Sequence record: MK250028.1
DNA length: 64,000 bases
Strand: one strand, 5' to 3'
This document shows, in pieces, positions 25,342-45,704 of the stretch; the stretch's first letter is position 1, and every line of letters starts with the position of its first letter. The notes beneath the pieces are model-generated. The model did not search any database. It saw nothing but the letters and a program-made list of their open reading frames with translations, and was not told the DNA's origin. The position numbers and the translations under genes are program-made.

Positions 25342-25372
25342 TAAATATAAAATAACTATTTATTGTATTTAT

Positions 25373-25714: not shown

Positions 25715-25830
25715 ATTTGTTAAATTTTAAACCATTATTATATAGTTTATATAATAATGTATAACTAATGTTTACTAAACTTTATTTTTATAATTAAATA
25801 CAATAATTATAAAATATTTTATTTATAGTT

Positions 25831-30695: not shown

Positions 30696-31289
30696 ATGAG
30701 GATAACTACATTAGAACAATTAAAAGAATATACCACATATACATATTTTAAAAATAATGATCCTGAATATACAAAAAAGAAAAAGGTATATATATGTCAA
30801 CCTGTTAATTATATAGATGAAGGTTTGAAACATATGGATATATGGTCTGGATATATTTTCTATAAGACTAATGCAAATTCTCGTAAAGTCGGTTTTTATG
30901 GATTTATGTTAGATATTGATAATGATCCTACATATAAAAAGAAAACGAAAGGTCAACCTGAATATATGCGAAAATTATCACCTATGTGGTATGTTAATAA
31001 AACTTTATATAAAACACAAAGTGAAGAAAATGTTAAGTTGTTTCCAGATTTAAAATTAGAAGAAAATTTTTTAATCGAGAAAAATAAAGCTATATTTACA
31101 TTAAAGAAAGAAGCAGAACAATATATAAAGGATATTAAAAACAACATTATTAAATTACCTGAGGTTGAACATATAGTTACGATGAAAACATGGTATAAAG
31201 ATAAAGACGGTAATAAGATAGAAGAAACTTCTGTAAAACATTTGCCAAGTGGTAGAACTGATGTAACAAGAAAAATAGTTAAAGAATAA
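30696..31289 (+). CDS. hypothetical protein
   Basis: 197-aa ORF followed by a hairpin terminator. Confidence 0.7.
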   Translation: MRITTLEQLKEYTTYTYFKNNDPEYTKKKKVYICQPVNYIDEGLKHMDIWSGYIFYKTNANSRKVGFYGFMLDIDNDPTYKKKTKGQPEYMRKLSPMWYVNKTLYKTQSEENVKLFPDLKLEENFLIEKNKAIFTLKKEAEQYIKDIKNNIIKLPEVEHIVTMKTWYKDKDGNKIEETSVKHLPSGRTDVTRKIVKE

Positions 31290-31376
31290 TATAAATAAAA
31301 GTCTTCATATTAGTTTATGAAGACTTTTTCTTTTTTATGACTATATAAATGTTAATTAACTATAATTTAATAATAG

Positions 31377-32531
31377 ATGAATACAGAAAATAAATTTAAT
31401 TATGTTCTCGTTGGTGGAACATACAATGATAATAAAGGTAAAGAATCTGGAGTTGTAAATAAATTATATCATGCATTAGGAACATTTAATGCAAAAATGT
31501 ATAATGGTGGTAATTACTATGATTTAGTCGGAGAAGCATTATCCGCCATTTCAGAAACAGATCTTATTATATGGATGGCAGATGTTGATAACAAAAAAGA
31601 GAAAGTGTATCCAAAGAAAAATACCGGTTCTGTTTTGATTTGTTCAAAAGTTATTCGTGATGATTATACTTATAAGGATGCAATAGCACGTATATTCAAA
31701 ATGCATGGTAATGCCGTCATTGCAATTACAAAGGATAATGAAACAAATATGTTTGTATTTGAATTTTGGGACGCATTAGCAAACTGTTGGTATAGAGGAA
31801 GTGATATTGAAAAACTTGCATTAACTATATATCGTTTTTATATATTCAGTAGAGGTAGTATTCGCAGGCAAACATATAGAGATAAATCATTAGTTTCATA
31901 TAATGATGGAAGACCAGATGATTTGAATGATTTCATTAAGTTAAACAATGGATTAGCAGATTTTATTCAAACTTCATGCGGAGATAGGTTTTTTGGGAAT
32001 TTGTCCACAAGATGTCAGAAGTTATTTCCATCAGAACGAAAAGGTAAATTTATTTATGTAAGTCCAAGAAACGTAGATAAGAATAGATTAACACCATCTG
32101 ATTTTGTATTGTTTGATACTGATGATTATTCTTATTATGCAGTAGACGAAAAAATGAAACCTTCTGTTGATTCTCCTGTACAAGCAGAATTATATAAGGA
32201 ATTCCCGACAATTAATTATATGATTCATGGACATGCATTTGTACATGTAATGAAAGATATAGATGAAGCAAATATACCAGTTGCAAGTACAGAGAATTAT
32301 TTTCCATGTGGTGATCTCAGGGAATTGTCAGAAGTAAAGAAATTAATGAAGTTCATTATATATGATGAATGTCATAAGAACTATGGTATCATTAATCTTA
32401 AAGGACATGGTTTTTTAATGTTCAGTCAGACTTTTGAACAAATGCAATATATGATTAATGATATACATTCATTTGTTATGAATGATGGTAATAGATTATT
32501 TAATTTAAAGCTAATTGATTATGGGATTTAA
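31377..32531 (+). CDS. class II aldolase/adducin-like domain protein
   Basis: GNLSTR, KPSVDSPVQAELY, MIHGH, LKGHG metal-binding pattern. Confidence 0.75.
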   Translation: MNTENKFNYVLVGGTYNDNKGKESGVVNKLYHALGTFNAKMYNGGNYYDLVGEALSAISETDLIIWMADVDNKKEKVYPKKNTGSVLICSKVIRDDYTYKDAIARIFKMHGNAVIAITKDNETNMFVFEFWDALANCWYRGSDIEKLALTIYRFYIFSRGSIRRQTYRDKSLVSYNDGRPDDLNDFIKLNNGLADFIQTSCGDRFFGNLSTRCQKLFPSERKGKFIYVSPRNVDKNRLTPSDFVLFDTDDYSYYAVDEKMKPSVDSPVQAELYKEFPTINYMIHGHAFVHVMKDIDEANIPVASTENYFPCGDLRELSEVKKLMKFIIYDECHKNYGIINLKGHGFLMFSQTFEQMQYMINDIHSFVMNDGNRLFNLKLIDYGI

Positions 32532-33204
32532 TATTAAATCATTGTTTGTTGTAGAAGAAGATACTGCAAATAAAGATAAAGTTGAAATTAAGCAGGATAA
32601 AGTAGAACCTGCTGTAAAAAAGCAAGAAGTAAACGTAGAACAACCAGTAAAAACTGAAGATACTAATACAAATGATGAATCAAAATCTCCTACTGATGAA
32701 GTGAACCATGAATTCCTTGATAAACTTTGCAATTATTTGGAAACATGTAAAATTGAAGGTGGCGATTATATGCAATTGAAGAAAGCAGCAAATAGTGAGG
32801 GTATGCAATGTATTCCCGATGAATCGGTTAGGTTCCAAGCTGCATTTGCAACACTTAAGAGTGTAAATCCTAACCTTACAAAGGATATTATTCTTTCTTC
32901 TATTGATACTTATATTAATGAGATGAATAAGCAACGAGATATTGCTATTGATCAAGTTGAAAAGAAACGTAAGATTAATGTAGGAGACAAGTCTAAAGCT
33001 ATTGCAGATAAACAAAAACAAATTGCAGATCTTCAAAATGAAATTGTTAAGTTATCTACCGAGGTATCAACAATGAAAGAAGAAGTTGATAAAGCAGATG
33101 AAGAATGTAATAGAAATGCACGAGAATTTACGAATGCTGTTAATATTATTGTTAACGCATTGGAATCAGATAAGAAAAAGATTTCAGAAAAATTAGTAGG
33201 TTAA
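32515..33204 (+). CDS. coiled-coil protein of the PspA-like/OmpA-ABC module
   Basis: low-complexity N-terminus, GGDYMQL motif, long C-terminal coiled coil. Confidence 0.75.
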   Translation: MIMGFNIKSLFVVEEDTANKDKVEIKQDKVEPAVKKQEVNVEQPVKTEDTNTNDESKSPTDEVNHEFLDKLCNYLETCKIEGGDYMQLKKAANSEGMQCIPDESVRFQAAFATLKSVNPNLTKDIILSSIDTYINEMNKQRDIAIDQVEKKRKINVGDKSKAIADKQKQIADLQNEIVKLSTEVSTMKEEVDKADEECNRNAREFTNAVNIIVNALESDKKKISEKLVG

Positions 33205-33212
33205 ATTAATAT

Positions 33213-33395
33213 ATGAAAGTAATAATTAAGAATTATGATTCTACAAAAGCAAATGATATTGTAATTCCTGTTGAAAATAATATGGATAAACATGTAGACT
33301 TTTCTAGCGGTTATGTAGTATTATCAGATGGAAATAATGTTAAGAAAGTTTATATTGATTTTAACAAATATCCTGAAGTAGAATTAGATTTATAA
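33213..33395 (+). CDS. small hypothetical protein
   Basis: 60-aa ORF between module genes. Confidence 0.5.
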   Translation: MKVIIKNYDSTKANDIVIPVENNMDKHVDFSSGYVVLSDGNNVKKVYIDFNKYPEVELDL

Positions 33396-33416
33396 TATAT
33401 AAAAATATTTTAAAGT

Positions 33417-34484
33417 ATGTCAGATTATAGTACAACAGATGTTATTAATGTTGCGAAGAATAAAGTATCACGATGGGAGAAACCTGGTGGTACAACGGGT
33501 ATGATTGTATTGGGTGTTGCCGTTGGTGCTATTGCAATTAATATTACACCTATTATGAATTTTATTGCGGCTGCTTGTGCAAGTACACTTAGTGCAATTG
33601 GAATGGCTGCTGCTCTTTTCCTTGTATTATATTGTTTGTTTGACCCACGTATTCGTAATATAGGTTCAACTATCTATTTTATGATTATGAGAAAGGTTGA
33701 AGGACTTCTCGTAGATTATGATCCTATTTCTATTGTGAAAAGAAAGATTGCAGAGATGAATAAGAAAATTCAGGAGATTACTGATAATATGGGTAAACTT
33801 CGTGGATTGATTGATAAATCAGAGAAACGTATTCAGGAAAAGAGAAAACAATGTGATCATGATTTTCAAATGCTTAATAAGTATAAGCAAACAGGAAAGA
33901 TGCAAGATGCTGCTGTTTATGAAAGACAAGTAGCAAGACTTACAGAAGTAATTAAGAATTCTGAAGCGAGACTTACTCAATCAAAGCAGTGGTATGAGAT
34001 TATGGGCAAACTTAAACATCAGGCAGACCTTACAGTTCTTGATGCAACAAATGAGATTAATGAACGCGTAGAAGAATGGGAAATGATTAAGGCACAACAC
34101 AAGGCATTCACTTCTATTGTAGGTATTATCAACGGTAAGGATGATCAGTTCAGTTTGTTTACTCGTGCAATGGATCATATGGCAGATGATATTTCTCAGA
34201 AGCTTGGTGAGATGTCATTTATTATTGAGGAAACCGGAGGTTTGATGTCAAAGATTGATATGGATAATCTTGTGATGTCTGATAAAGCAAATGCTCTTCT
34301 TGCTCAATATAATGCAGGTGGATTGGATGCGGTTCTCCTTGGTAGTTTTGCAAATCAACCAATTGAACATCAGCCAACAGAAACCGTAGAATTTAAGGAA
34401 GTAGAATACGCAAAACCTAATAGTAATGCAAGTTCTATTACAAATAATAAACAACAAACGCTTAGTCAACCTAATTGGTTCTAA
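33417..34484 (+). CDS. membrane-anchored PspA/IM30-like coiled-coil protein
   Basis: two N-terminal hydrophobic helices, then DPISIVKRKIAEM and a long helical hairpin. Confidence 0.6.
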   Translation: MSDYSTTDVINVAKNKVSRWEKPGGTTGMIVLGVAVGAIAINITPIMNFIAAACASTLSAIGMAAALFLVLYCLFDPRIRNIGSTIYFMIMRKVEGLLVDYDPISIVKRKIAEMNKKIQEITDNMGKLRGLIDKSEKRIQEKRKQCDHDFQMLNKYKQTGKMQDAAVYERQVARLTEVIKNSEARLTQSKQWYEIMGKLKHQADLTVLDATNEINERVEEWEMIKAQHKAFTSIVGIINGKDDQFSLFTRAMDHMADDISQKLGEMSFIIEETGGLMSKIDMDNLVMSDKANALLAQYNAGGLDAVLLGSFANQPIEHQPTETVEFKEVEYAKPNSNASSITNNKQQTLSQPNWF

Positions 34485-34588
34485 GAATTATTTTATCATT
34501 CATTTCATTAATTATATTTTTTATTTAATCTTAGTGAACTATATGGATTTATTTCTATAGTTCACTTTTTTATTTAATATTTTATGTG

Positions 34589-34596
34589 TATCTTTG
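34589..34596 (+). promoter_or_regulatory. Bacteroidetes -7 box TATCTTTG
   Basis: ATGTGTATCTTTGTATTGT upstream of 34634. Confidence 0.72.
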
Positions 34597-34633
34597 TATT
34601 GTAAATTATTTAACTAATTAAAATATAGAAATT

Positions 34634-34975
34634 ATGTTAAAGGTCGTAGATACATCATATTATATAATTAATAATAAAGAAAAAAAAGAATTCTTTATAT
34701 ATTATGATATAAACCATAAGATTGATTGTAATATGTCTTTATGGGATATTATGTTTGATTTACAGATTGAAGATGTAAATGAAGATAATAAAGATTTTCT
34801 TTTACAAGAATTCTTTAAAAAGAATTGGACACGATTCTTTATGATTAAATCTATTCCTTATGATACTATGGTAAATGTATTACCATGGGATAGTATTTTA
34901 AATATGGTAAATCAAATTGTGCAAACAATAGTTAAATATGAAGATTTAAAAGCTATTCCATCAAACAATAAGTAA
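34634..34975 (+). CDS. hypothetical protein
   Basis: 113-aa ORF with its own promoter. Confidence 0.7.
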   Translation: MLKVVDTSYYIINNKEKKEFFIYYDINHKIDCNMSLWDIMFDLQIEDVNEDNKDFLLQEFFKKNWTRFFMIKSIPYDTMVNVLPWDSILNMVNQIVQTIVKYEDLKAIPSNNK

Positions 34976-35045
34976 TTTTTAAAATAAAAGAATAATAGAA
35001 ATAAACAAATTAATTTAGTAACTTTAATAAAAGATTTTTAAAATT

Positions 35046-36629
35046 ATGGCAAATGTAGTTTTGCGACCTTGGGTAAAGGTTGTAGGAGTTATTGCGGTAG
35101 TTGCCGCTATTATGTTTGGTGCATCGAAGTTTTTCGGTGGTAATAGTGATGATAAGTCATCTTCTAATAGTGGAGGATTGTTTAGTAACATTTTCTCTGG
35201 TAGTGATGATAACGTTATTACTATTGGTACAAATACATATGCAGGATTCCTTCCATTTATGTATTTGAATAATGGCCTTAATCCTAATGAGGATTGCCCC
35301 ATTTACAAGGAATATGGTATTAAGTTGAAGATTGTCGTACAAGATGATTTTGCTGCTGGTCGAGCGGCATTTAAGAACGGCGATATTGATATTATCTATT
35401 GTACTGCAGATGCTCTTCCTGTTGAAATGAGTGAAGGATCTGATATGAATGATGCGAAATTCTTTAATATTTCTAACTGGTCACGTGGTGCTGATGCCAT
35501 TGTAGTTAATAAAGGAATTCAGAATGTAAGCGGACTTATTGGTAAGGTTGTTTGTTGTTCACAGGGTACAGCATCTCATACACTTTTGTTGAATACACTT
35601 GAGACAAATGGTATTGGAACAGATAAAGTAAACATGAGTAATTCTGTTGATCCAAATAAGGTTAATGTGAAGGTTGTAGATAGTGGCTTGGATGCAGCAA
35701 GTGCATTCCGTGCAGGTTCATGTGATGCAGCAGTTGTATTCTCTCCAGATGATCAGGATTTGGTTGCAACTGTTAAGGGAGCGCATGTATTGATTTCTAC
35801 AAAACAAGCATCAAATATTATTTGTGATGGTTTGATTGCAAAGCAGAGTTATCTTGATTCTAATAAGGAAAATGTAAAGAAACTTATTTCTGCATTGTTG
35901 TGGGCAAATAACCTTATGAATACTGATAGTAAAGCTGTAGCAACAGCAGCAAAGGCATTTGCAACTGCATATAATACAGATGAGAATTTCGCTATTAATG
36001 GTTCAAAGAATATTCATTATGTCACATTGGGTGATGCTCAGAATTTCTTTGGGTTGAATAGCTCATATACAGGTGTAAAGGGAGATGAATTGTATTCAAA
36101 GATGGCTCGTACATATGAGTCTCTTGGACTTTGTAAGCATCCACTTGCATGGAGGAAAGTATCTTATTCTGATATTATTGAGAGTATTGCATCTGAGCCT
36201 GATAAGGTAAAGGGCGATCAGTCTGCAGAAGCAGGTCCAAAGTTTAATGAAACATCTATATCAGATGCAGAAACGAAGACAGCAATTTCAGACAAGAAGG
36301 TAACTATTGAATATGGTGTAAATAGTGATATTCTTGATAACGCAGCACAGAGTATTATTGATAAGGAATTTGCTGGTATTGCAAAACAGTTTGCAGGTTC
36401 AAAGATTCGAATTATTGGTAATACAGATAATACAGGTAATTATGCATATAATGTAGATTTGTCTCGTAGACGTGCACAGTCTGTTGCTAATTATCTTGTA
36501 AAAGAATATGGATTTGATAAGAACCGTTTCATTATTATTGGTAATGGTCCAAAGCGTGCCGTTGCAGATGGTGTAGTAGGAGATAATAAGTCATATCGTT
36601 CTACTGATTTTCAGTTGATTTCAGAGTAA
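35046..36629 (+). CDS. ABC substrate-binding protein (NMT1/SsuA-like) fused to an OmpA-like peptidoglycan-binding domain
   Basis: N-terminal TM anchor, NWSRGADAIVV and GTASHTLL SBP motifs, C-terminal IIGNTDNTG...NVDLSRRRAQSVANYL. Confidence 0.88.
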   Translation: MANVVLRPWVKVVGVIAVVAAIMFGASKFFGGNSDDKSSSNSGGLFSNIFSGSDDNVITIGTNTYAGFLPFMYLNNGLNPNEDCPIYKEYGIKLKIVVQDDFAAGRAAFKNGDIDIIYCTADALPVEMSEGSDMNDAKFFNISNWSRGADAIVVNKGIQNVSGLIGKVVCCSQGTASHTLLLNTLETNGIGTDKVNMSNSVDPNKVNVKVVDSGLDAASAFRAGSCDAAVVFSPDDQDLVATVKGAHVLISTKQASNIICDGLIAKQSYLDSNKENVKKLISALLWANNLMNTDSKAVATAAKAFATAYNTDENFAINGSKNIHYVTLGDAQNFFGLNSSYTGVKGDELYSKMARTYESLGLCKHPLAWRKVSYSDIIESIASEPDKVKGDQSAEAGPKFNETSISDAETKTAISDKKVTIEYGVNSDILDNAAQSIIDKEFAGIAKQFAGSKIRIIGNTDNTGNYAYNVDLSRRRAQSVANYLVKEYGFDKNRFIIIGNGPKRAVADGVVGDNKSYRSTDFQLISE

Positions 36630-36701
36630 TTAAAATAAATTATAAACATGCGGTTTATAGAAAATAATTTTTATTAAATTCTATAAACCGCATTTTTAAT
36701 T

Positions 36702-37199
36702 ATGAAATATAAGCATGAATTAATAGGTAATAAAGTATTAATTATATGTGATTGTGATGGTATAAGTATTCATCGAATATATTGTGCATATATATTGGGT
36801 GAAGTTATTGATTATAATCCTATTACAAATGAAATAAGTATTAGGATAATTAATAATGATATGAATTACTATAGAATGTACAAATTATTTTATAGTAAAT
36901 TAGGAACACGTACATATTTTGAATTTAAACTTAATACATATGATCCTTTTGATCATAAATACTGTTCAGATAATCGTTTAGGATATATAGATCCAAGGGA
37001 CTATAATGATTTATGGTGGTATGAAGCATATTCAGGTAATGAAGCAATATCATTATTAAAAAATAACCTATTAGAAACAAAAGATAAACCTGTATATAAT
37101 TATTGTTATCTATCTACTGATTGTTATGGTAGTTTTAAATCTAAAAAAGAATATTTAACATATCTTTTAAATGAATTAAGTAATGAAAATACAGAATGA
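36702..37199 (+). CDS. paralog family member 1 (KVLII..YC family)
   Basis: MKYKHELIGNKVLIIC...RIYCAYILG. Confidence 0.7.
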   Translation: MKYKHELIGNKVLIICDCDGISIHRIYCAYILGEVIDYNPITNEISIRIINNDMNYYRMYKLFYSKLGTRTYFEFKLNTYDPFDHKYCSDNRLGYIDPRDYNDLWWYEAYSGNEAISLLKNNLLETKDKPVYNYCYLSTDCYGSFKSKKEYLTYLLNELSNENTE

Positions 37200-37623
37200 T
37201 TTAATAGGTAAAAAAGTACTAATTATTCATACATATGTTAGTAAATTCTTTAGGAGTTATTGTACATACCATATAGCAACAATTAAATATTATTATCCAT
37301 CAGGTAATTTTATTATTGTAGAATGTCCGAATATTAATCGCACAAGATTTACATTAATAGATCATGATGATCCATTTATAAATAAAGATTATTCAGATAA
37401 AAAATTGGCAATGAATTTTTCAACTAATGATGGATGGTATTATGTATTTACAAATAAATCTTCAATCAGACAATTAGAATATAATTTAATACATTATAAA
37501 AATAAACGTTCATTCAATAGCTGTAGAATGATAGTTTCTACGGGACGTTTAATGACAACAAAAGAACGGAAAAACTGTTTTGAAACATTATTAAGTAAAA
37601 TACAAGATGAAATATCGAAATGA
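37183..37623 (+). CDS. paralog family member 2
   Basis: MKIQNDLIGKKVLII...RSYCTY. Confidence 0.7.
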   Translation: MKIQNDLIGKKVLIIHTYVSKFFRSYCTYHIATIKYYYPSGNFIIVECPNINRTRFTLIDHDDPFINKDYSDKKLAMNFSTNDGWYYVFTNKSSIRQLEYNLIHYKNKRSFNSCRMIVSTGRLMTTKERKNCFETLLSKIQDEISK

Positions 37624-38065
37624 CTTAATAGATAAGAAAGTATTAATTATATGTAATAGTTCTGGTCCTAACAACTGGAATCATTATTGTAGTTATGTTG
37701 TTGGGAAAGTAATAAGTTATAATCCATCTATTAATTCTATAATGATTGAATATGGTGATAAAACACGAAACTATTTTTCTTTAATTGATTATAATGATCC
37801 ATTTAAGAAACATAATGATAGTTATAATAGAGGACTATATAAACGATTAGCATATAAAATACCATTGAATAGATATTCAGAAAGTTGGTGGTATGATGTC
37901 TTTTCATTACAATCTGCAGAAAAATTATTAAATCATAATATTAAACATTCACGAGAAAAATATGTATATGGTGAATGTATATTATCAAAAGTATGTTATA
38001 ATCATATAAGTAAAAAGAATTTTTTTGAATTATTATTAAAAGAATTAAAAGATGAATCTAATTAA
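37607..38065 (+). CDS. paralog family member 3
   Basis: MKYRNDLIDKKVLIIC...HYCSYVVG. Confidence 0.7.
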   Translation: MKYRNDLIDKKVLIICNSSGPNNWNHYCSYVVGKVISYNPSINSIMIEYGDKTRNYFSLIDYNDPFKKHNDSYNRGLYKRLAYKIPLNRYSESWWYDVFSLQSAEKLLNHNIKHSREKYVYGECILSKVCYNHISKKNFFELLLKELKDESN

Positions 38066-38885
38066 ACGTTTATTTAAATTTGGAGGAACTTCTGATTTTG
38101 GTACGTTAACAAATGTAATTATTAGTATCATAGGTGCTGTTATTATCATTATGGGATGGCATTTCATTTCTGCATATGATATTGTATCTAGTAATATTCT
38201 TCCAGATCCATTTAAGGTAATTGGTAGTATTCCTACACTTATTACTGAAAATCATTTGTTTGCAAATATTTGGTATACAGTTAAACTAAATCTTTCATGT
38301 TATGTATATGCAATTTTACTATCATTTCCAATAGGATTTTTTATAGCATTATATCCTATTAATAATATACTATTTGGAAAATATATTAATTCTGTAAGAT
38401 TTATTCCATTGCCTTCTATTACAGGAATTTTCTTAGCAATATTTGGACTTACATTTGGAATGAAAGTATGGTTTCTTACTGTTGCAATTATGATTTACAT
38501 TATTCCTTCTGTTGTTAATAAGGTAAATGATTTACAAAATCCTGCTAATGAAAAAGATAATGTATATCTTCAGACCGCACAAACAATGGGTATGTCTGCA
38601 TGGCAGAAGTTCAGATATGTATATTTCCCTTATGTAACAGGTGGTGTAGTTGATTCTTGTATTGATTTGCTTGCAATTAGTTATAGTTATGTAGTTATTG
38701 CAGAAATGATTTATAAGGATGGAACTATAAGTGGTATGGGTGCATTGATTAATACGATGGTAAGACAATCACAAATGTCTTCCGCATATGCATTGTTATT
38801 CTTAATTATTATTATTGGTTGCGTACAGGATTTCTTGTTTAAGAAAGGTGCAAGACTATTATTTCCTTACAAATATAAAAATTAA
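38052..38885 (+). CDS. ABC transporter permease (NitT/TauT/SsuC-like)
   Basis: six TM segments, LPDPFKV, EAA-loop equivalent YLQTAQTMGMSAWQKFRYVYFP. Confidence 0.9.
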   Translation: MNLIKRLFKFGGTSDFGTLTNVIISIIGAVIIIMGWHFISAYDIVSSNILPDPFKVIGSIPTLITENHLFANIWYTVKLNLSCYVYAILLSFPIGFFIALYPINNILFGKYINSVRFIPLPSITGIFLAIFGLTFGMKVWFLTVAIMIYIIPSVVNKVNDLQNPANEKDNVYLQTAQTMGMSAWQKFRYVYFPYVTGGVVDSCIDLLAISYSYVVIAEMIYKDGTISGMGALINTMVRQSQMSSAYALLFLIIIIGCVQDFLFKKGARLLFPYKYKN

Positions 38886-38893
38886 TAAAGATT

Positions 38894-39883
38894 ATGAGTG
38901 ATTTTAAAACATTATTTGGACAAAATAATCAAGAGGATAAGAAAACACCTATCCTGTTAGAACAAGAAAAAAATATTAATTCATCTACAAATGATTCCAG
39001 TATTCCTGATGTAAGTAATAATGTAGATAAGCCAAATACACCAGATGTAAGTTTACCTAATAATCAGAAAAAAGATCGGGGTGATGGTAAAATAGATGTT
39101 GTTAATTTTAAAAATTTAACACAAATATTTAATAAAGGTAAGAAAAATGAATATAAATTATTTGAAAATTTCTCTTTGAATATAAATGATATTCCGAATG
39201 ATTTTCAATCCGTGAGTATTATGGGCACATCTGGCTGTGGAAAAAGCAGATTAGTACGTCTTTTATGTGGATTGGATGACGTTCAATCTGGAAGTGTTTC
39301 TGTATATGGTAAATCATTATCAGAATTTGGTAATATTCCTATGGTATTTCAAAATCATAGTAATAGTAATTATCCTTGGATGAAAATTATAGATAATGTA
39401 ATGTTACCAATGATTATTAGAGGATTTTCTAAAAAAGATGCGTATGAGAAAGCATTACAATTGATTAAGTTAGTTGGACTTGAAGGAAAAGAAAACGATT
39501 ATCCAAATATGCTAAGTGGCGGACAAAATCAACGTATAGCAATTAGTAAATGTCTTGCTTCGAATTCTCAAATTATTGTATTAGATGAAGCAACTGGCGC
39601 ATTAGATATAAAAATGAAAAAAGAGATTCAAAATATTATTTTAAAAATATTATATGATTCAAACGTAGATCCTACTATTATTAATATTACTCATAGTATT
39701 GAAGAGGCTCTATATATAAGTAATAAAATTTTTATATTAAAAGCTAACCCTTGCGGTATTGTTAAAGTTATGAATATTCATTATCCAAATGAAGAAAATA
39801 TGCACCGAGATGAATGGATTTTTCAAACAGAAGAGTATAAAAAATATTATTTAGAATTATCAAAAACATTATCTAATATTTAA
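38894..39883 (+). CDS. ABC transporter ATP-binding protein (NitT/TauT-like)
   Basis: Walker A GTSGCGKS, signature LSGGQNQR, Walker B VLDE, H-loop ITHSIEEA. Confidence 0.93.
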   Translation: MSDFKTLFGQNNQEDKKTPILLEQEKNINSSTNDSSIPDVSNNVDKPNTPDVSLPNNQKKDRGDGKIDVVNFKNLTQIFNKGKKNEYKLFENFSLNINDIPNDFQSVSIMGTSGCGKSRLVRLLCGLDDVQSGSVSVYGKSLSEFGNIPMVFQNHSNSNYPWMKIIDNVMLPMIIRGFSKKDAYEKALQLIKLVGLEGKENDYPNMLSGGQNQRIAISKCLASNSQIIVLDEATGALDIKMKKEIQNIILKILYDSNVDPTIINITHSIEEALYISNKIFILKANPCGIVKVMNIHYPNEENMHRDEWIFQTEEYKKYYLELSKTLSNI

Positions 39884-39937
39884 ATAGATAAATATAATGG
39901 ATTCATAATTATTTATGAATTTATATTTTGCAAAGTT

Positions 39938-39967
39938 GAGCATATTACTAAATTTAGTAATATGCTC
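39938..39967 (+). terminator. intrinsic terminator-like hairpin
   Basis: GAGCATATTACTAA/TTAGTAATATGCTC followed by a T tract. Confidence 0.7.
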
Positions 39968-40013
39968 TTTTATTTTATAGATAAATATAATGCAAAATAT
40001 AAATTAAATAATT

Positions 40014-40979
40014 ATGAGAAATATTACACATGATGAATTTATCACATGTGCTAGATCTATACACGGTGATAAATATGATTATTCATAGTCAAAGTTTATT
40101 AATAAATCTACGTTAATTAAAGTATCTGATAATATACATGGTATTTTTGAAATTCTTCCATTTAAACATTTATTATACGATGGATATAATAAAAATTATT
40201 TAAATAGTTATGCGAATGAATACAAAAAACATTTTATAGAAGTATGTAAATTAGTTCATAATAATAAATATGATTATTCAAAAACAGTATATATACATTC
40301 ATAAACAAAAATGTTAATAACATGTCCTATACATGGTGATTTTTATCAATTACCAATGTCACATATACATGGTAAAGGTTGTAGTAAATGTGGTGATTTA
40401 TCTACAGCTTATAAACAAGCATATACAACTGAAGAATTTATTAATAAATCAAAATAGATACATGGTAATAAATATGATTATTCTAATGTACATTATATAA
40501 GTAACAAATATAAGGTTATTATAGGATGTCCTATACATGGTAATTTTTTATAGTCTCCTGATAAACATTTAAATGGTCATGGTTGTCCAAAATGTGTTTT
40601 ATATAAATTAGAAAATACAATATCATTATTACTTGATAACAATAATATTAAATATAATAAAAATTATAAAGAATTTAAATGGTTAATAAATGATATTAAT
40701 CATTCATTAGAATTAGATTTCTATATACCTGAATATAATATTGCTATAGAATGTTAGGGTAAATAGCATTTTGAACCAGTTGAAAAATTTGGAGGAAATG
40801 AAGCATATTAAATATAGGTTAAAAATGATTAGATAAAATAGACATTATGTAAATAGCATAATATAAAATTATGTTATTTTTGTGACAAATATAACTATAT
40901 AAATAATTATAAATTAGGATATTTAACATATAAAACAGAAAATTTATTAGAATATATACGATTTCATTTATTAGTTTAA
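40014..40979 (+). pseudogene. degenerate homing endonuclease (TAG=Gln; two premature TAA)
   Basis: three H(G/N)xKYDYS...(C)xIHG repeats, GCPKC, nuclease LDFYIPEYNIAIECQGKQH; in-frame TAA at 40302 and 40809. Confidence 0.8.
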
Positions 40980-40984
40980 TATAC

Positions 40985-41332
40985 ATTTCAATAGCCCGTT
41001 CACTTGCATGTGATTCAAAATTACTTATGTTAGATGAATATTCGTCAGGTCTTGATTATTTCACTAAATTTGAATTACAAGATCTTCTATTAAGTATTTT
41101 TAATAATAGAGATGTAGATAGAACATTCTTGATAGTTACTCATAATATTTCAGAGGCTGTATATCTTTCAAATCGTATTTATATATTGGAACCAAATCCA
41201 TGTAGAATCAAGGATGTAATTGATATTAAATTCAGTCAACCAAGAACACAAGCTATTCGTGAAACAGATGAATTTAAAAATTATCAAGCTAAAGTTCTTA
41301 AAGCATTAAATGAAACAATTAATAATAAGTAA
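40985..41332 (+). pseudogene. orphan 3' half of an ABC ATPase gene
   Basis: ISIARSLACDSKLLMLDEYSSGLD...IVTHNISEAVYLSNRI begins right after the position of the signature motif; no Walker A. Confidence 0.85.
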
Positions 41333-41343
41333 TTTTAAAAATT

Positions 41344-41679
41344 ATGACAAAACATATTATAACATTTGGTGATCTTAATTCTGGAGATCATATTTTTAGA
41401 TATAGAATTGTTAAAGACAAAGCTAAATTAGAAACATTAGTAGTACAAGATATTAAAATTACAAATGATAAAGCTATAATAATTATAAAAGATTCATCCA
41501 TAATTTATACTTTTGATAAAGAACGAACATATATTATGGGCGGTAATAATGATGATTGGAGTAGTTCTGTTATTGTCTCTGATTATGAATTAGTGGAATT
41601 CATTAAAACTGTTATTAATATAACAAAACAACCACTTATAAGACAACATGTTAATTTAATAAATTTTATATCAGATTGA
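41344..41679 (+). CDS. hypothetical protein
   Basis: 111-aa ORF. Confidence 0.65.
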   Translation: MTKHIITFGDLNSGDHIFRYRIVKDKAKLETLVVQDIKITNDKAIIIIKDSSIIYTFDKERTYIMGGNNDDWSSSVIVSDYELVEFIKTVINITKQPLIRQHVNLINFISD

Positions 41680-41737
41680 AATATAAAAAGGTGAGATAAT
41701 ATACTAAACTATCTCACCTTTTTTCTTTATATATAAT

Positions 41738-42187
41738 ATGAAAATATTAAATGATATAGTTAATAAAAAAGTATTAATAATATATAAATGTAATGGTCCT
41801 GCTGGATGGCATAGAGATTATTGTGGTTATAAAATTGGGAAAATAGTAGAATATAATATTGAAAATAATACTGTTAATATTGAAGATAAAAAGAAAAATA
41901 TAAAAACATATAAAATTATAGATAAAAAAGATCCATTTAATTTAAATTTAATACAAAATAATGATAATAGATTCGCATATTATTATATTTCAAACTATAG
42001 GCAAATACGTGAATGGGAAAATGTTTTTATATATAATGATGCATTAACTATTTTAAAAAATAGTATTAAACAATCACATTCACAATATGTATATAAACTA
42101 TTTTGTTTATCTTCATTTTCATATGGTAAAAAAACAAAGAAAAGATTTTTAAGAGATCTATTAAAAGAATTAGAAGAAAATTATTAA
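41738..42187 (+). CDS. paralog family member 4
   Basis: MKILNDIVNKKVLIIYKCNGP...RDYCGYKIG. Confidence 0.7.
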   Translation: MKILNDIVNKKVLIIYKCNGPAGWHRDYCGYKIGKIVEYNIENNTVNIEDKKKNIKTYKIIDKKDPFNLNLIQNNDNRFAYYYISNYRQIREWENVFIYNDALTILKNSIKQSHSQYVYKLFCLSSFSYGKKTKKRFLRDLLKELEENY

Positions 42188-42215
42188 TAATATTTTTTGT
42201 TTAAAATAAAATGTG

Positions 42216-42223
42216 TATCTTTG
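42216..42223 (+). promoter_or_regulatory. Bacteroidetes -7 box TATCTTTG
   Basis: ATGTGTATCTTTGTATTGT upstream of 42265. Confidence 0.72.
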
Positions 42224-42264
42224 TATTGTTAATAAAATAATGAACAATTAAAAATATAAACAAT

Positions 42265-42591
42265 ATGAAAGCAAATTTTGTAACGGTTATCAAGAAGAGA
42301 GCAATCAAGAATGTACCAGCATTTCAAGATTTCTCAATGAAACAGATTAAGGTTATTAGTAATTCACCTAATTATCCAAATTCTGTAACTTTATCTATGG
42401 ACATTTATTGTGATAATGTTGATGGTTATATTTTTAATAATGCATCTACAAATGAACAATATGCATTGACATCTGTTCAACTTAGTGACGCATTACGTAA
42501 GATGATTAGTAATAAAAAGTGTTATAAGCCTAACAGTAAGGAAGATTTACTTAGACTTACATTTGATACTATTGAATCTTTTAAATTTTAA
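42265..42591 (+). CDS. hypothetical protein
   Basis: 108-aa ORF with its own promoter. Confidence 0.7.
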   Translation: MKANFVTVIKKRAIKNVPAFQDFSMKQIKVISNSPNYPNSVTLSMDIYCDNVDGYIFNNASTNEQYALTSVQLSDALRKMISNKKCYKPNSKEDLLRLTFDTIESFKF

Positions 42592-42603
42592 TTAATTTAA
42601 ATG

Positions 42604-42632
42604 TAGACAATAATACATTATTAATATATAAT
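42604..42632 (+). promoter_or_regulatory. TAGACA-N17-TATAAT promoter upstream of the tRNA
   Basis: TAGACA 42604-42609 and TATAAT 42627-42632. Confidence 0.6.
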
Positions 42633-42691
42633 ATATATAAATTATTTGATTAAACAAATTAATGAAAAATTAAAAATAATTTATTAAAATG

Positions 42692-42722
42692 TAGACAATA
42701 TCAAATAAATAACATATAAATA
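42692..42722 (+). promoter_or_regulatory. TAGACA-N17-TATAAATA promoter upstream of the tRNA
   Basis: second tandem copy of the same motif. Confidence 0.6.
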
Positions 42723-42840
42723 ATATAATAATTAAAAACAAACGCTTATTTGATTTTCGTAGCGTTATGGATAAGTTGATAGAATTCAGAAATTCCTTTT
42801 AAGACGAATACACATGGAATGGTCCATTGGTGGAATTGGT

Positions 42841-43149
42841 AAAGTGTTTGCCTGCATTAATTTGTAGAATCCATCAAATTCAGTATCAGTTAGGATTAAA
42901 TTTTAAATATTAGTAGTTGCTATTGACGAAAATATTGACAATAATTAATTTATTGTTACCTGAGGAATAAGTGTTTATTTAATAAACAACGAAGAAGCTG
43001 ACTAAGAAAACCTAAGGTCTTCATAAGAAGATAGCTTGGTAATACTGAGCCAAGATAATTTTTAATTATAAGGTGCAGAGACTATACGGTGGGAACTAAT
43101 AGCAAGTTAAGATATAGTCCAAACTTTATAGAAATATAAAGAGTTTTTG
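42841..43149 (+). ncRNA. group I intron in the tRNA D-loop (309 nt, no ORF)
   Basis: P1 GGU-AAA/UUU-GCC with U.G at the 5' splice site, P10 GUGUUU/AGACAC, P7 GACUA 43080 / UAGUC 43115, terminal G 43149. Confidence 0.88.
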
Positions 43150-43164
43150 AGACACGAGGGACTT

Positions 43165-43512
43165 AAAAAATTTGAGTGCTCTATTGAGAAATCATAGAAG
43201 TAGAATCTCCCTAACGAAACGGAAGCCTAATTATTGGTGACAATAATGGTGGTGACGAACTCACTAAGTTGTTATAGAACGTTAATCTATATTAAATGTA
43301 AATTGAAGTGTTACAGCATAAATAGCGAAGAGACTATAGAGGAGATACCTAAGTTAAAGTACACGAAGAATAATCAATTAGATTATCACTATATATGAAG
43401 AGTATATAGTTTTATAATAAGGAATGCGCATTACTTTAATATGGTAGTAAAATAGTCCAGACTACAACATCTTAATAATTAAGATGGCTTGTATTAAAGC
43501 AAGAGTAGTAAG
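43165..43512 (+). ncRNA. group I intron in the tRNA anticodon, U34/A35 (348 nt, no ORF)
   Basis: P1 ACUU-AAA/UUU-GAGU with U.G at the splice site, P7 GACUA 43332 / UAGUC 43453, terminal G 43512. Confidence 0.9.
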
Positions 43513-43568
43513 AAAATCCCTTGGGCAGAAATGCCCGTGCCGGTTCGAATCCGGCATGGACTACATAT

Positions 43569-43607
43569 AAAAGTCTGATAATCAATAGCTTAGATTATCA
43601 GACTTTT
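43569..43607 (+). terminator. intrinsic terminator after the tRNA
   Basis: AAAAGTCTGATAATC/GATTATCAGACTTTT hairpin. Confidence 0.78.
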
Positions 43608-43648
43608 ATTTTTATATAGTATATAAAGTATAATTAATATTTTTAATA

Positions 43649-44785
43649 ATGATTACAATTACAGAACAATATATAAAAGAGTACCAAAAGAAATTAGATG
43701 ATATTTCTAAATCATTTGATTTAGAGAAACAACATATTATAGTTGAAGAATTATCAATTAAAGTTTCTGCACCAGATTTTTGGGATGATTTTGAAAGTGC
43801 GACATCAATCACAAAAGAACTTAATACAGCAAAAGAAAAGATAGATGATGTTGAACATATGAAAATGCTTATTGATGAGTTATCAACTGCATTAATGTAT
43901 TATAAGGAATTTGAAGGTAAAGATGAAGAAGAATATATAAATCTAGCGAATTCTGAATTAATTAGTGAATTCAGTAAATTTGAGGATAAGTATAGATTTG
44001 TTGATCCTACAGATTCATTAGGAGCTGTATTAGACATTAATGCAGGTGCAGGAGGAACAGAAGCAAATGATTGGGCAAATATGTTATTCCGTATGTATGA
44101 GATGTGGGCAAAATCAAATAATTATAAGTTTAAAGTTTTATATTATTCAGAAGGGGATAAAGTAGGTATTAAAAATGTATCTATTGAAATTACTGGTAAT
44201 AATGCGTATGGAACATTAAAAGGTGAAACCGGTGTTCATAGAATGGTAAGGGTTTCACCATATAATGCACAAGGTAAACGTATGACTAGTTTTGCTGCAG
44301 TTTCTGTTGTGCCTTTAGTAGATAATTCTATCAAGGTTGAAATTGACGATTCTAAATTAACAATAGATACATTTAGATCTTCTGGTGCTGGTGGTCAAAA
44401 TGTAAATAAGGTAGAATCTGGTGTACGTGTAAATTATATGTATACAGATCCAGATACAGGTGAAACAGAAAAAATTCAAGTTGCAAATACAGAAACAAGA
44501 GATCAACCAAAGAATAAAGAAAGAGCAATGCAAATTCTTAAATCTATTCTTTATAAGAAAGCATTGGATAAACAATTAGCTAAGAAAAAAGAAATAGAAG
44601 ATGCAAAACTTAAAAATGAATGGGGTGCACAAATTAGATCTTATGTATTTGATGATAAGCGAGTAAAAGATCATCGTACAGGTTATCAAACAACTGATGT
44701 TGATTCTGTTATGAATGGAAATATAAATGGTTTTATAGAATCATATAATAATTGGATTATTGAGCAAGAAAATAATAGACTTTAA
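43649..44785 (+). CDS. prfB: peptide chain release factor 2
   Basis: GGTEANDWA, GETGVHRMVRVSPY (SPF-type motif), FRSSGAGGQNVNK (GGQ), WGAQIRSY; no internal frameshift. Confidence 0.95.
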   Translation: MITITEQYIKEYQKKLDDISKSFDLEKQHIIVEELSIKVSAPDFWDDFESATSITKELNTAKEKIDDVEHMKMLIDELSTALMYYKEFEGKDEEEYINLANSELISEFSKFEDKYRFVDPTDSLGAVLDINAGAGGTEANDWANMLFRMYEMWAKSNNYKFKVLYYSEGDKVGIKNVSIEITGNNAYGTLKGETGVHRMVRVSPYNAQGKRMTSFAAVSVVPLVDNSIKVEIDDSKLTIDTFRSSGAGGQNVNKVESGVRVNYMYTDPDTGETEKIQVANTETRDQPKNKERAMQILKSILYKKALDKQLAKKKEIEDAKLKNEWGAQIRSYVFDDKRVKDHRTGYQTTDVDSVMNGNINGFIESYNNWIIEQENNRL

Positions 44786-44842
44786 TTAAATATTTTCTTA
44801 TAAATAATTAATGAAATATTTTCCTATATAAAATAAATTATG

Positions 44843-44850
44843 TATCTTTG
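44843..44850 (+). promoter_or_regulatory. Bacteroidetes -7 box TATCTTTG
   Basis: TTATGTATCTTTGTATTGT upstream of 44898. Confidence 0.72.
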
Positions 44851-44897
44851 TATTGTTGATAATTAAATTAGTATAAACAATTAAAAATATAAAGGTT

Positions 44898-45119
44898 ATG
44901 AAAGTACGTATAGGAAGAGACGAAAAGTTCATTGAACTTGGTAAGTATGACGATATAACAATTATAGATGATGCTGGTACAGAGTATCGCATTGAAGCAA
45001 ATGATCCTTGTTATCAAGGTAATGGTATAAAAGTTTATGATATTGATGGGTGCATTCTTGTAAAACCATCTACATCAAATCTTGTACAAATTTTCTCGAC
45101 ATCAAAGATTGAGTTGTAA
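44898..45119 (+). CDS. hypothetical protein
   Basis: 73-aa ORF with its own promoter. Confidence 0.7.
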   Translation: MKVRIGRDEKFIELGKYDDITIIDDAGTEYRIEANDPCYQGNGIKVYDIDGCILVKPSTSNLVQIFSTSKIEL

Positions 45120-45174
45120 TATCTATAATTGTTTTATATGTTAATATGAAAATTTTAACTATAAAATATATTAT

Positions 45175-45702: not shown

Positions 45703-45704
45703 AA

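What the first reader, a model, noticed from the sequence alone, without database searches (positions are those of the whole stretch)
31377..39883. Phage-encoded envelope module: PspA-like protein, SBP-OmpA fusion, ABC permease and ATPase
Seen: co-oriented genes for a class II aldolase-like protein, a coiled-coil protein, a 2-TM PspA/IM30-like protein, a membrane-anchored NMT1/SsuA-like binding protein fused to an OmpA-like peptidoglycan-binding domain, a permease and an ATPase. All are TAG-free, so they can be translated early. A complete ABC system is unusual cargo for a phage. Inference: tethering the binding protein to peptidoglycan and pairing it with PspA-like coiled coils suggests envelope-stress or membrane-potential maintenance during a long infection, or superinfection exclusion, rather than plain nutrient uptake.
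Basis: partly seen in the sequence, partly recalled or inferred. Interest (0 to 1): 0.75.

Follow-up and report, generated by a model that had tools for sequence, protein, structure and literature searches.

The report
Megaphage copy of PspA-like/ABC envelope operon
A Lak megaphage carries a five-gene cassette, a peptidoglycan-tethered ABC importer plus two helical membrane proteins (one PspA/ESCRT-III-like), that is also a chromosomal operon of many Bacteroidota and common in other huge phages; its link to the membrane is real, but its function is untested.

Summary
The window comes from a TAG-recoded Prevotella Lak-B megaphage. They contain no in-frame TAG, against about 62 expected.

The functional core is five genes in a fixed order:
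- a coiled-coil partner protein;
- a 2-TM protein with a PspA/ESCRT-III-like helical hairpin;
- a membrane-anchored NMT1/SsuA-type binding protein fused to an OmpA-like peptidoglycan-binding domain;
- a BPD-type permease;
- an ABC ATPase.

This exact array recurs in 50 of 60 IMG/VR loci, mostly from contigs of 100-520 kb. It also recurs in the 735-kb phage LR756501 and in at least 37 of 80 genome loci, nearly all Bacteroidota. Those include isolates in which housekeeping genes flank the array. Bacillus phage G has a rearranged variant.

The aldolase-like gene and the three paralogous ORFs between the binding protein and the permease are additions of the Lak lineage.

A related operon (PspA, TM-anchored Snf7, ABC transporter, PBPb-OmpA protein) was noted computationally by Ravi et al. 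2024. A 2026 preprint reports ABC systems next to PspA genes in huge phages.

The Lak locus is therefore a new member of a known but uncharacterised kind. The idea of membrane maintenance coupled to solute import is plausible and unproven.

The parts
31297..31328 (+). Terminator-like hairpin (13-bp stem followed by a T-run) just upstream of the block. It is the likely 5' boundary of the transcription unit.
   Evidence: 8 terminator-like sites found against 1.9 expected in shuffles
31377..32531 (+). 384-aa protein. The C-terminal part (about residues 207-306) resembles the class II aldolase/AraD fold and keeps an H-x-H motif; the N-terminal half is unknown. It is a Lak-lineage neighbour, not part of the conserved cassette.
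   Evidence: It is syntenic in Lak-A, B and C and has one homologue in LR756500, where it is not near an ABC module. It is absent from the other cassette loci.
32521..33204 (+). Coiled-coil partner protein ('CC', 227 aa from ATG 32521). It has a conserved short hydrophobic N-terminal motif followed by acidic residues, then a disordered Pro-rich linker, a small helical domain and a roughly 100-residue helix. No known fold was found.
   Evidence: Alignment A3 of 39 orthologues; AF2 pLDDT 83; no PDB or Atlas fold match outside its own family; it sits upstream of the 2-TM gene in 50 of 60 viral loci.
33213..33395 (+). 60-aa ORF between the CC gene and the 2-TM gene. It was not examined further and no counterpart was looked for in other loci; in most of them the CC and 2-TM genes abut or overlap.
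33417..34484 (+). 355-aa membrane-anchored PspA/ESCRT-III-like protein. It has a TM hairpin (helices 25-54 and 57-75), a long alpha-hairpin (103-159 and 162-235) and two further helices. The N- and C-termini are predicted to be cytoplasmic by the positive-inside rule.
   Evidence: (756 clusters at 50% identity)
34634..34975 (+). 113-aa ORF of unknown function; no family match.
35046..36629 (+). 527-aa binding protein. In order: an N-terminal signal-anchor TM, a Ser/Gly linker, an NMT1/SsuA-type (NitT/TauT family) substrate-binding domain, a linker, and an OmpA-like peptidoglycan-binding domain that keeps the N-T-D...L-S-x-x-R-A motif.
   Evidence: the nearest solved proteins are TauA at E 1.4e-12 and SsuA at 9e-12
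36702..38065 (+). Three tandem, overlapping paralogous ORFs (165, 146 and 152 aa) inserted between the binding protein and the permease. A fourth paralogue lies at 41738-42187. Among the loci compared they occur only in Lak-B copies; no family match.
38052..38885 (+). 277-aa ABC permease (BPD_transp_1 type, with an EAA-like loop).
   Evidence: (SaoP/TauC-type models, E 5e-19 and 2e-8, below the cut-offs)
38894..39883 (+). 329-aa ABC ATPase with Walker A, Q-loop, LSGGQ signature, Walker B D-E and H-loop, plus a low-complexity N-terminal extension of about 65 aa.
   Evidence: (SaoA/TauB/NtrCD-type models, E 4e-45 to 3e-38)
39938..39967 (+). Terminator-like hairpin (13-bp stem followed by a T-run) 55 nt after the ATPase stop codon. 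It is the likely 3' boundary of the unit.

Best explanation
SHOWN. The block is the Lak-B copy of a conserved five-gene cassette: CC partner, TM-anchored PspA/ESCRT-III-like protein, TM-anchored binding protein fused to an OmpA-like domain, permease, ATPase. Bacteroidota chromosomes and many huge phages share this cassette. The last three genes encode a complete type I ABC importer of the NitT/TauT (taurine/sulfonate/nitrate) family, with intact catalytic motifs. The block uses only the standard code and lies between two terminator-like hairpins.

INFERRED.
- The genes are translated before the phage switches TAG to a sense codon.
- The binding protein sits in the periplasm. Its N-terminal helix anchors it in the inner membrane and its OmpA-like domain holds it on peptidoglycan, next to its permease.
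- On the cytoplasmic face, the 2-TM protein forms PspA/ESCRT-III-type assemblies with the CC protein and stabilises or reshapes the inner membrane around the transporter.
- The net effect would be to keep the host membrane tight and energised, and a particular solute flowing in, during the long megaphage infection.
- The solute is unknown.
For: - Identity of the window: the binding protein is 100% identical to Lak-B1 and other Lak-B records, and the window shows TAG recoding.
- Viral synteny: the exact colinear array occurs in 50 of 60 IMG/VR loci, 34 of them on contigs of at least 100 kb.
- Other viral contexts: the array is present in LR756501. Of eight metagenome contexts of distant (21-36% identity) 2-TM homologues, seven have the binding protein directly downstream, and the permease and/or ATPase follow wherever the contig continues.
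- Bacterial synteny: at least 37 of 80 genome loci, including isolates with housekeeping flanks.
- PspA-like nature of the 2-TM protein.
- Importer family and OmpA domain.
- Code and unit boundaries. An RF2 gene lies in the same TAG-free stretch.
- Literature: a related operon was noted in PMC11237479, and ABC systems next to phage PspA genes in 10.64898/2026.10.24.761521.
Against: - No experiment or expression data: no RNA run holds the stretch.
- No curated PspA model hits any of the 140 family members, and a single-sequence hhalign was negative.
- BAR domains score as well as PspA in the VIA fold search, so the fold call rests on moderate evidence.
- Binding between the CC and 2-TM proteins got no answer from complex prediction.
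- Two viral loci carry the ABC triad without the helical pair. One 2-TM homologue sits beside DnaJ with no ABC genes. The parts can therefore work apart.
Confidence: 0.5

Rival explanations
1. Plain auxiliary metabolic uptake. The cassette is simply a nutrient importer (a sulfonate-, taurine-, nitrate- or bicarbonate-like solute, or a pyrimidine/thiamine precursor) that boosts host supply. The two helical proteins would be assembly or regulatory accessories of the transporter, with no general role in membrane stress.
For: - The nearest solved binding proteins are TauA, SsuA and NrtA-type.
- The transporter is complete and has intact motifs.
- The ABC triad occurs without the helical pair in L032 and L033.
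- Pocket-region residues are invariant across phage and bacterial homologues.
Against: - The helical pair is kept in fixed order with the transporter across sequences only 21-40% identical, in both phages and bacteria. Ordinary NitT/TauT importers are not described with such partners (background knowledge, not tested here).
- Peptidoglycan tethering of a binding protein is not needed for uptake.
- No score reaches the cut-off of any substrate-specific family.
Confidence: 0.25
2. ABC-powered membrane remodelling. The ABC ATPase and permease act mainly as an energy or anchoring module for the ESCRT-III-like polymer, in the place that Vps4 or the SpoVK-like AAA+ takes elsewhere. The complex, fixed to peptidoglycan, would then build or repair membrane structures such as vesicles, invaginations or the sealing of injection and lysis lesions.
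For: - A few bacterial versions add a double AAA+ ATPase directly after the ABC ATPase, as in the operon described by Ravi et al.. Phage versions lack it.
- The ATPase carries a conserved N-terminal extension in Lak and LR756501.
- The OmpA tether would give a fixed point of reference.
Against: - The permease is a standard type I importer fold and the binding protein a standard PBP, and both are well conserved.
- There is no evidence of contact between the ABC parts and the helical proteins.
- Complex prediction gave no answer.
Confidence: 0.12
3. Superinfection exclusion or envelope barrier. The peptidoglycan-tethered protein and the membrane proteins alter the envelope so that other phages cannot inject.
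For: The only support is that the block is probably expressed early and acts at the envelope.
Against: - The same operon is chromosomal in free-living Bacteroidota, among housekeeping genes.
- A catalytically intact importer is not expected for a mere barrier.
- The cassette was not scanned against the PADLOC defence models.
Confidence: 0.06

Closest known systems
Operon of PspA, TM-anchored divergent Snf7, ABC ATPase, permease and PBPb+OmpA protein (with a double AAA+), noted in Ravi et al., mSystems 2024 (PMC11237479; example OGG56892.1, Candidatus Handelsmanbacteria)
   Same: - A solute- and peptidoglycan-binding PBP+OmpA fusion with a signal/TM anchor.
- An ABC permease and an ABC ATPase.
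- A membrane-anchored ESCRT-III-superfamily protein.
- A second helical protein in the same operon.
- A double AAA+ follows the ABC ATPase in 4 of 80 bacterial loci found here.
   Different: - Gene order differs. Here the TM-anchored PspA-like gene lies directly upstream of the binding protein; there the order is PspA, PBPb-OmpA, permease, ATPase, TM-Snf7, AAA+.
- The Lak window and all 60 viral loci lack the AAA+.
- The first gene here (CC) is not demonstrably a PspA.
- That paper gives one bacterial example and no phage.
Huge-phage PspA loci with adjacent complete ABC systems (Yuan & Chen, bioRxiv 2026, 10.64898/2026.10.24.761521)
   Same: Large-genome gut phages carrying a PspA-type protein next to a binding protein, an ATPase and a permease. 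The authors offer the same speculative reading, membrane-stress mitigation.
   Different: - They report 15 such cases among 189 PspA genes, which were found through structure clusters and PF04012.
- The family here has no Pfam hit and is far larger (756 clusters at 50% identity).
- Whether the Lak locus is in their set could not be checked.
- No mention of the OmpA fusion, the CC partner or the bacterial chromosomal operon was seen in the passages read.
PspA/Vipp1(IM30)/LiaH with membrane anchors (PspB/C, LiaI)
   Same: - A long alpha1-alpha2/3 hairpin followed by shorter helices.
- A DP motif at the start of alpha1, aligned in register with E. coli PspA residues 24-163.
- Location on the cytoplasmic face of the membrane.
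- Topologically, the 2-TM anchor plus PspA-like domain resembles a LiaI-LiaH pair joined in one chain (background knowledge).
   Different: - The amphipathic N-terminal helix alpha0 is replaced by a TM hairpin.
- No curated PspA model is matched.
- There is no PspF, PspBC or LiaRS-type regulator in the locus.
TauABC / SsuABC / NrtABCD (NitT/TauT family ABC importers)
   Same: Binding-protein fold family, permease type and ATPase subfamily.
   Different: - All scores are far below the equivalog cut-offs.
- The binding protein is TM-anchored and fused to an OmpA-like domain.
- Two helical membrane proteins accompany the transporter.
- The substrate is unknown.
Bacillus phage G gp243-gp250
   Same: It carries a permease (gp243), an ATPase (gp245) and two binding-protein/OmpA fusions (gp249 and gp250, 25-31% identical). 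It also has gp246, which has the same N-terminal motif and a coiled coil, and gp247, which has one TM followed by a helical domain.
   Different: - The gene order is rearranged (permease, ATPase, helical genes, then the binding proteins).
- gp247 is not detected by the 2-TM family profile.
- The host is Gram-positive.

Membership tests
Type I ABC importer, NitT/TauT family | ATPase with Walker A, Q-loop, LSGGQ signature, Walker B D-E and H-loop | tested here: met
   All the motifs can be read in the translation. TauB/NtrCD/SaoA-type models match at E 4e-45 to 3e-38.
Type I ABC importer, NitT/TauT family | BPD_transp_1 permease with an EAA-type coupling loop | tested here: met
   SaoP/TauC models match at E 5e-19 and 2e-8. 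Pfam BPD_transp_1 hits the orthologues. The loop is visible in the sequence.
Type I ABC importer, NitT/TauT family | Cognate binding protein of the NMT1/SsuA fold | tested here: met
   PF09084 and PF13379. SsuA_fam E 2.5e-19. The domain profile hits solved TauA, SsuA and NrtA-type proteins.
Substrate-specific equivalogs (TauA, SsuA, NrtA, urea-carboxylase-linked binding protein) | Score above the curated cut-off of the family | tested here: not met
   The best score is 69.6 bits against a cut-off of 163.5 (SsuA_fam); all others fall further below.
OmpA-like peptidoglycan-binding domain (PF00691) | Domain match, with the conserved Asp and Arg of the N-T-D...L-S-x-x-R-A motif | tested here: met
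   PF00691. Solved OprF, YiaD and Pal-type domains match at E 1e-10 to 1e-4. G458, L472, S473, R476 and A477 are invariant in the wider 10-sequence alignment A2; the motif's N, T and D (N459, T460, D461) are invariant only in the six closer sequences of A5.
PspA/IM30 family (PF04012; TIGR02977) | Match to the family's sequence model | tested here: not met
   There is no Pfam hit on record. No PspA model is hit by any of the 140 members at E <= 0.1.
PspA/IM30 family (PF04012; TIGR02977) | Remote homology by profile-profile comparison | tested here: inconclusive
   hhalign of the soluble part against a 10-sequence PspA profile gives prob 75.5%, E 2.4e-5 over 140 columns, in register from the DP motif. 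Control scores are 16-19, but other coiled-coil profiles reach 25-31. The single-sequence test gave prob 2%.
ESCRT-III superfamily (PspA/Vipp1/Snf7) fold | Long alpha1-alpha2/3 hairpin followed by alpha4 and alpha5 | tested here: inconclusive
   The model has this helix pattern. The best Foldseek PDB hits are Vipp1/PspA (E 8e-3, prob 1.0). In the VIA search, E. coli PspA scores Z 11.0 (rmsd 2.8 over 122 residues), Vipp1 10.0 and Snf7 9.9. BAR domains, however, reach Z 12, and helical models have a high background.
ESCRT-III superfamily (PspA/Vipp1/Snf7) fold | Homo-oligomeric rings or rods on membranes; an AAA+ disassembly partner | not testable with these tools
   Assembly needs experiment. 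No AAA+ partner was found in the window or in the 60 viral loci.
Ravi et al. PspA/TM-Snf7/ABC/PBPb-OmpA operon | Co-operonic PBPb+OmpA protein, permease, ABC ATPase and TM-anchored ESCRT-III-like protein | tested here: met
Ravi et al. PspA/TM-Snf7/ABC/PBPb-OmpA operon | A free PspA and a double AAA+ ATPase in the same operon | tested here: not met
   The CC protein shows no PspA fold or profile match. The AAA+ is absent from the window.
Class II aldolase/adducin N-terminal family (gene 31377) | Full-length domain match with the metal-binding His residues | tested here: inconclusive
   Only about 90-100 residues align (profile positions about 33-123 of 230), at E 1e-8, far below the cut-offs. 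An H-x-H motif is present.

The most novel reading that the evidence does not exclude
The cassette is a new kind of ESCRT-III-type machine. A membrane-anchored PspA/Snf7-like polymer would be organised by the CC partner and mechanically or energetically coupled to a peptidoglycan-fixed ABC transporter, without any Vps4-like AAA+ in the phage versions. Huge phages would have captured it repeatedly from Bacteroidota to remodel or reseal the host inner membrane during infection.
Probability: 0.12. Interest if true: 0.85.

Novelty: new member of a known kind. Interest (0 to 1): 0.5.

Why it matters
PspA/ESCRT-III proteins are the main known membrane-repair system of bacteria, yet how they connect to transport and to the cell wall is open.

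This cassette links the three physically and genetically. It is conserved over deep divergence, it is found in cultivable Bacteroidota and, as a variant, in the cultivable Bacillus phage G, and it has moved between hosts and huge phages several times. That makes the proposed link between membrane remodelling and solute transport testable in ordinary laboratory systems.

For megaphage biology, it marks a probably early-expressed function aimed at the host envelope.

The work also corrects the picture: the module is host-derived operon cargo, not a phage invention.

Tried and rejected
- Complex prediction of the soluble part of the 2-TM protein with the CC protein returned no answer (score 0.00). 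It is evidence neither for nor against binding.
- Expression: no RNA run holds the stretch, only two DNA-type holders from one study.
- Whole-genome search of the window's own assembly: no genome is held.
- Sequence-level PspA tests failed: phmmer and the family profile against PDB gave only generic coiled-coil hits, NCBIfam on 140 members gave SMC/Rad50-type noise, and hhalign against E. coli PspA alone gave prob 2%.
- My last homologous-protein search, with E. coli PspA, returned only relatives at least 86% identical and was of little use. tblastn of PspA against phages and plasmids gave few diverse sequences.
- The CC protein as a PspA: no fold match, and only a short coiled-coil match to PspA. 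Rejected for now.
Narrower alignments worked.
- Sigma-70 promoter scan: no more sites than in shuffles, and the consensus is not apt for Bacteroidota or phage promoters.
- Chance adjacency of the genes: rejected by the synteny counts.
- SaoA/SaoP naming: these are merely the best-scoring ABC models, far below their cut-offs. They belong to a selenoprotein-linked operon (10.1101/2022.07.06.499078) that has nothing else in common with this locus.

Full report
**What the window is.** The 527-aa binding protein is 100% identical to Prevotella phage Lak-B1, B3, B5, B6 and B9, and 86% identical to Lak-A and Lak-C. Reading TAG as a sense codon doubles the length of long ORFs in the window. G+C is about 26%. 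The window is therefore a stretch of a TAG-recoded Lak-B megaphage. No whole genome is held for it. The masked N runs (11399-26615) were left alone.

**Check of the observation.** Between 31377 and 39883 lie eleven co-oriented, tightly packed + strand ORFs.

- 31377-32531 is a 384-aa protein whose residues about 207-306 resemble class II aldolases or AraD. Only that part matches, and it falls far below the curated cut-offs.
- 32521-33204 is a coiled-coil protein.
- 33417-34484 is a 355-aa protein with two N-terminal TM helices.
- 35046-36629 is a 527-aa NMT1/SsuA-type binding protein fused to an OmpA-like domain.
- 38052-38885 is a BPD-type permease.
- 38894-39883 is an ABC ATPase with every catalytic motif.

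The block has no in-frame TAG in 2,735 codons, where the flanking recoded genes (2.27% TAG) predict about 62. All its stop codons are TAA or TGA. Two strong terminator-like hairpins, at 31297-31328 and 39938-39967, bracket exactly this block.

**Which genes belong together.** I compared the block with other loci in several collections.
- In the 735-kb phage LR756501, which uses the standard code, the order is: 242-aa coiled-coil protein, 353-aa 2-TM helical protein, 528-aa binding-protein/OmpA fusion, permease, ATPase.
- The 2-TM protein belongs to a large family: 756 clusters at 50% identity with E <= 1e-3, nearly all about 340 aa and colinear.
- Of eight metagenome contexts of distant family members (21-36% identity), seven have the binding protein directly downstream. 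Where the contig extends upstream, the preceding gene is about 200-240 aa long. The permease and ATPase follow wherever the contig continues. One member sits beside DnaJ without an ABC system.
- A scan of IMG/VR with the binding-protein alignment gave 60 loci. Profile searches of their ORFs show the colinear, same-strand array CC, 2-TM, binding protein, permease, ATPase in 50 of them. Of those 50, 34 lie on contigs of at least 100 kb and 21 on contigs of at least 200 kb.
- Two viral loci have only the ABC triad.
- Bacillus phage G and one relative carry a rearranged version: permease, ATPase, then a helical protein with the same N-terminal motif, a 1-TM helical protein, and two binding-protein fusions.
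- The aldolase-like gene, the small ORFs and the paralogues are not found in any of these other loci. The aldolase-like gene keeps its position only within Lak A, B and C.

The conserved unit is therefore five genes, and the rest is Lak-lineage decoration.

**The cassette is not phage-specific.** A scan of one genome per prokaryotic species found more than 455 relatives of the binding protein. The 80 best are nearly all Bacteroidota: Chitinophagaceae, Saprospiraceae, Lewinellaceae, Cytophagales and others. They include three isolates (Niastella vici, Lacihabitans sp. and Flavilitoribacter nigricans) and megabase-sized chromosomes.
- The same five-gene array is present in 37 of the 80 loci exactly, and in more that are cut short by contig ends.
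- In Niastella and Lacihabitans the flanking genes are housekeeping ones (purC, a TonB-dependent receptor, TldD/PmbA), so the operon is chromosomal and not in a prophage.
- Some of these genomes have two copies.
- In Lacihabitans and three others, a 642-aa SpoVK/CbbX-type AAA+ ATPase follows the ABC ATPase directly. Only the C-terminal part (about residues 300-620) matched AAA+ models; I read it as the double AAA+ of Ravi et al. from its length, not from a test of the N-terminal half. No viral locus, and not the window, has this gene.
- In a maximum-likelihood tree of the binding protein, the Lak clade sits in a well-supported group of gut viral contigs. That group also holds 'Bacteroidales MAG' contigs from horse and ruminants, which are probably binned Lak-like phages.
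- Viral and genome-derived rows interleave with at least 7-9 label changes. Bacterial rows cluster by family. A deep clade of 21 rows is viral only.
- This pattern fits vertical inheritance in bacteria with repeated exchange with their large phages. The direction of transfer was not tested.
- In the genus of one such MAG, only 3 of 35 genomes hold the 2-TM family, with nearly equal scores. I did not resolve whether those are phage contigs.

**What the proteins are.**

*Transporter.* It is a type I importer of the NitT/TauT family. The binding-domain profile hits solved TauA (E 1.4e-12), SsuA and NrtA-type proteins, but no substrate-specific model comes near its cut-off, so the solute is unknown. 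The N-terminus of the binding protein has basic residues, then a hydrophobic helix, and no lipobox. I read this as a signal anchor that places both domains in the periplasm. The OmpA-like domain keeps the peptidoglycan-binding motif.

*2-TM protein.* The AF2 model (pLDDT 79.7) shows a TM hairpin, then helices 103-159 and 162-235 forming a long hairpin, then two shorter helices. Basic residues before TM1 and after TM2 put the helical part in the cytoplasm.
- Foldseek's best PDB hits are Vipp1 and PspA assemblies (E 8e-3 to 1e-1, prob 1.0).
- The Foldseek-independent search gives E. coli PspA Z 11.0 (rmsd 2.8 over 122 residues, and the highest identity among the rows listed), Vipp1 10.0 and Snf7 9.9. 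BAR domains reach 12, and such Z values are common for helical models.
- The Atlas search lists PspA clusters after the protein's own family.
- Curated PspA models do not match.
- An hhalign of the soluble part against a small but diverse PspA profile gives prob 75.5%, E 2.4e-5 over 140 columns. It aligns window residues 102-244 to PspA 24-163 and puts the family's nearly invariant Pro103 on the DP that opens PspA helix alpha1.
- Reversed and 20 column-shuffled controls score 10-19 against 40. Other coiled-coil profiles reach 25-31 over about 55 columns.

I take this as moderate support for membership of the PspA/ESCRT-III superfamily, with the amphipathic alpha0 replaced by a TM hairpin.

*CC protein.* It has a conserved short hydrophobic N-terminal motif followed by acidic residues, which is reminiscent of PspA/Vipp1 alpha0. 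A disordered linker, a small helical domain and a roughly 100-residue helix follow. It has no fold match outside its own family.

**How it most likely works.**

Shown:
- the anatomy of the block;
- the conservation of the five-gene order;
- the completeness of the importer;
- the exclusive use of the standard code.

Inferred:
- The block is one unit, translated before the code switch. This fits the published model for recoded phages and the presence of an RF2 gene (43649-44785, 403 bits against a cut-off of 370) in the same largely TAG-free stretch, 30696-48731.
- The binding protein is held between the inner membrane and peptidoglycan, next to its permease.
- The 2-TM protein, with CC, forms PspA-type assemblies on the inner face of the membrane.
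- Together they keep the membrane sealed and energised and keep a solute flowing in during a long infection.

I hold this at about 0.5. The identity of the parts is much firmer than the physiological role. The rivals are plain solute uptake (0.25), an ABC-coupled remodelling machine (0.12) and superinfection exclusion (0.06).

**Comparison with what is known.**
- Ravi et al. [quoted passage not shown] They suggested a link between membrane remodelling and solute transport. They cite one Handelsmanbacteria example, with a different gene order.
- Yuan and Chen (bioRxiv 2026) report complete ABC systems next to 15 of 189 huge-phage PspA genes, and speculate on membrane-stress mitigation.
- No other paper in the library connects these elements.

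The Lak locus is thus a new member of a kind known only from comparative genomics. What this analysis adds:
- the fixed five-gene order;
- the CC partner family;
- the size of the 2-TM family;
- the breadth of the operon in Bacteroidota chromosomes;
- the repeated phage-host exchange;
- the existence of cultivable carriers for experiments.

Noticed in passing
window 43649-44785 (+): An intact, TAG-free peptide chain release factor 2 gene (403 bits against the prfB cut-off of 370), with no frameshift site needed. It lies in the same largely TAG-free stretch (30696-48731) as the cassette. That fits code-switch machinery made under the standard code.
   Followed up: partly
window 40014-41332 (+): A well-conserved C-terminal fragment of a second NitT/TauT-type ABC ATPase lies at about 40985-41314, covering the Walker B to H-loop region (profile positions 157-266). 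No N-terminal half is found in any frame. Two TAG-containing ORFs (40014-40304 and 40311-40811) precede it. They carry repeated H-G-x-K-Y-D-Y-S motifs and a PD-(D/E)xK-like motif and look like a homing endonuclease. This may be a partial duplication or a disruption linked to a mobile endonuclease.
   Followed up: partly
window 36702-37199, 37183-37623, 37607-38065, 41738-42187 (+): A four-member family of roughly 150-aa paralogues (29-37% identical), with no match in NCBIfam or PHROGs. Three of them are wedged between the binding protein and the permease. Among the loci compared, they occur only in Lak-B copies.
   Followed up: partly
L148 9296-11224 (Lacihabitans sp. LS3-19); also L122, L132, L149: A 642-aa SpoVK/CbbX/EccA-type AAA+ ATPase overlaps the stop codon of the ABC ATPase in 4 of 80 bacterial loci. 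Only its C-terminal part (about residues 300-620) matched AAA+ models. It is absent from all 60 viral loci.
   Followed up: yes
L008 988-1887; L004 12265-13020: Other membrane genes ride with the cassette in some phage contigs. A Band_7/SPFH gene lies two genes upstream in L008. An Ion_trans channel gene overlaps the end of the ABC ATPase in L004 and L005.
   Followed up: no
L046-L074 (21 IMG/VR loci); L008, L009: A deep clade found only in viral contigs has longer binding proteins (about 590-610 aa). In the two metagenome contigs with such long binding proteins (L008, L009) Pfam sees only the OmpA domain, although the same five-gene order is kept. I did not place L008 and L009 in the tree, so their membership of the clade is an assumption. 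The binding domain there is very divergent.
   Followed up: partly
metagenome contig of P0306 (no DNA held): A 370-aa member of the 2-TM PspA-like family lies directly upstream of a DnaJ gene in a phage-like contig (DNA ligase, methyltransferases, IF3), with no ABC genes nearby.
   Followed up: no
G011 contig C3 near 738,500 (L155): One of three genomes in the genus of the 'Prevotella sp.' MAG that hold the 2-TM family carries it on a contig of more than 739 kb. Whether this is a chromosome, a prophage or a very large phage contig was not resolved.
   Followed up: no
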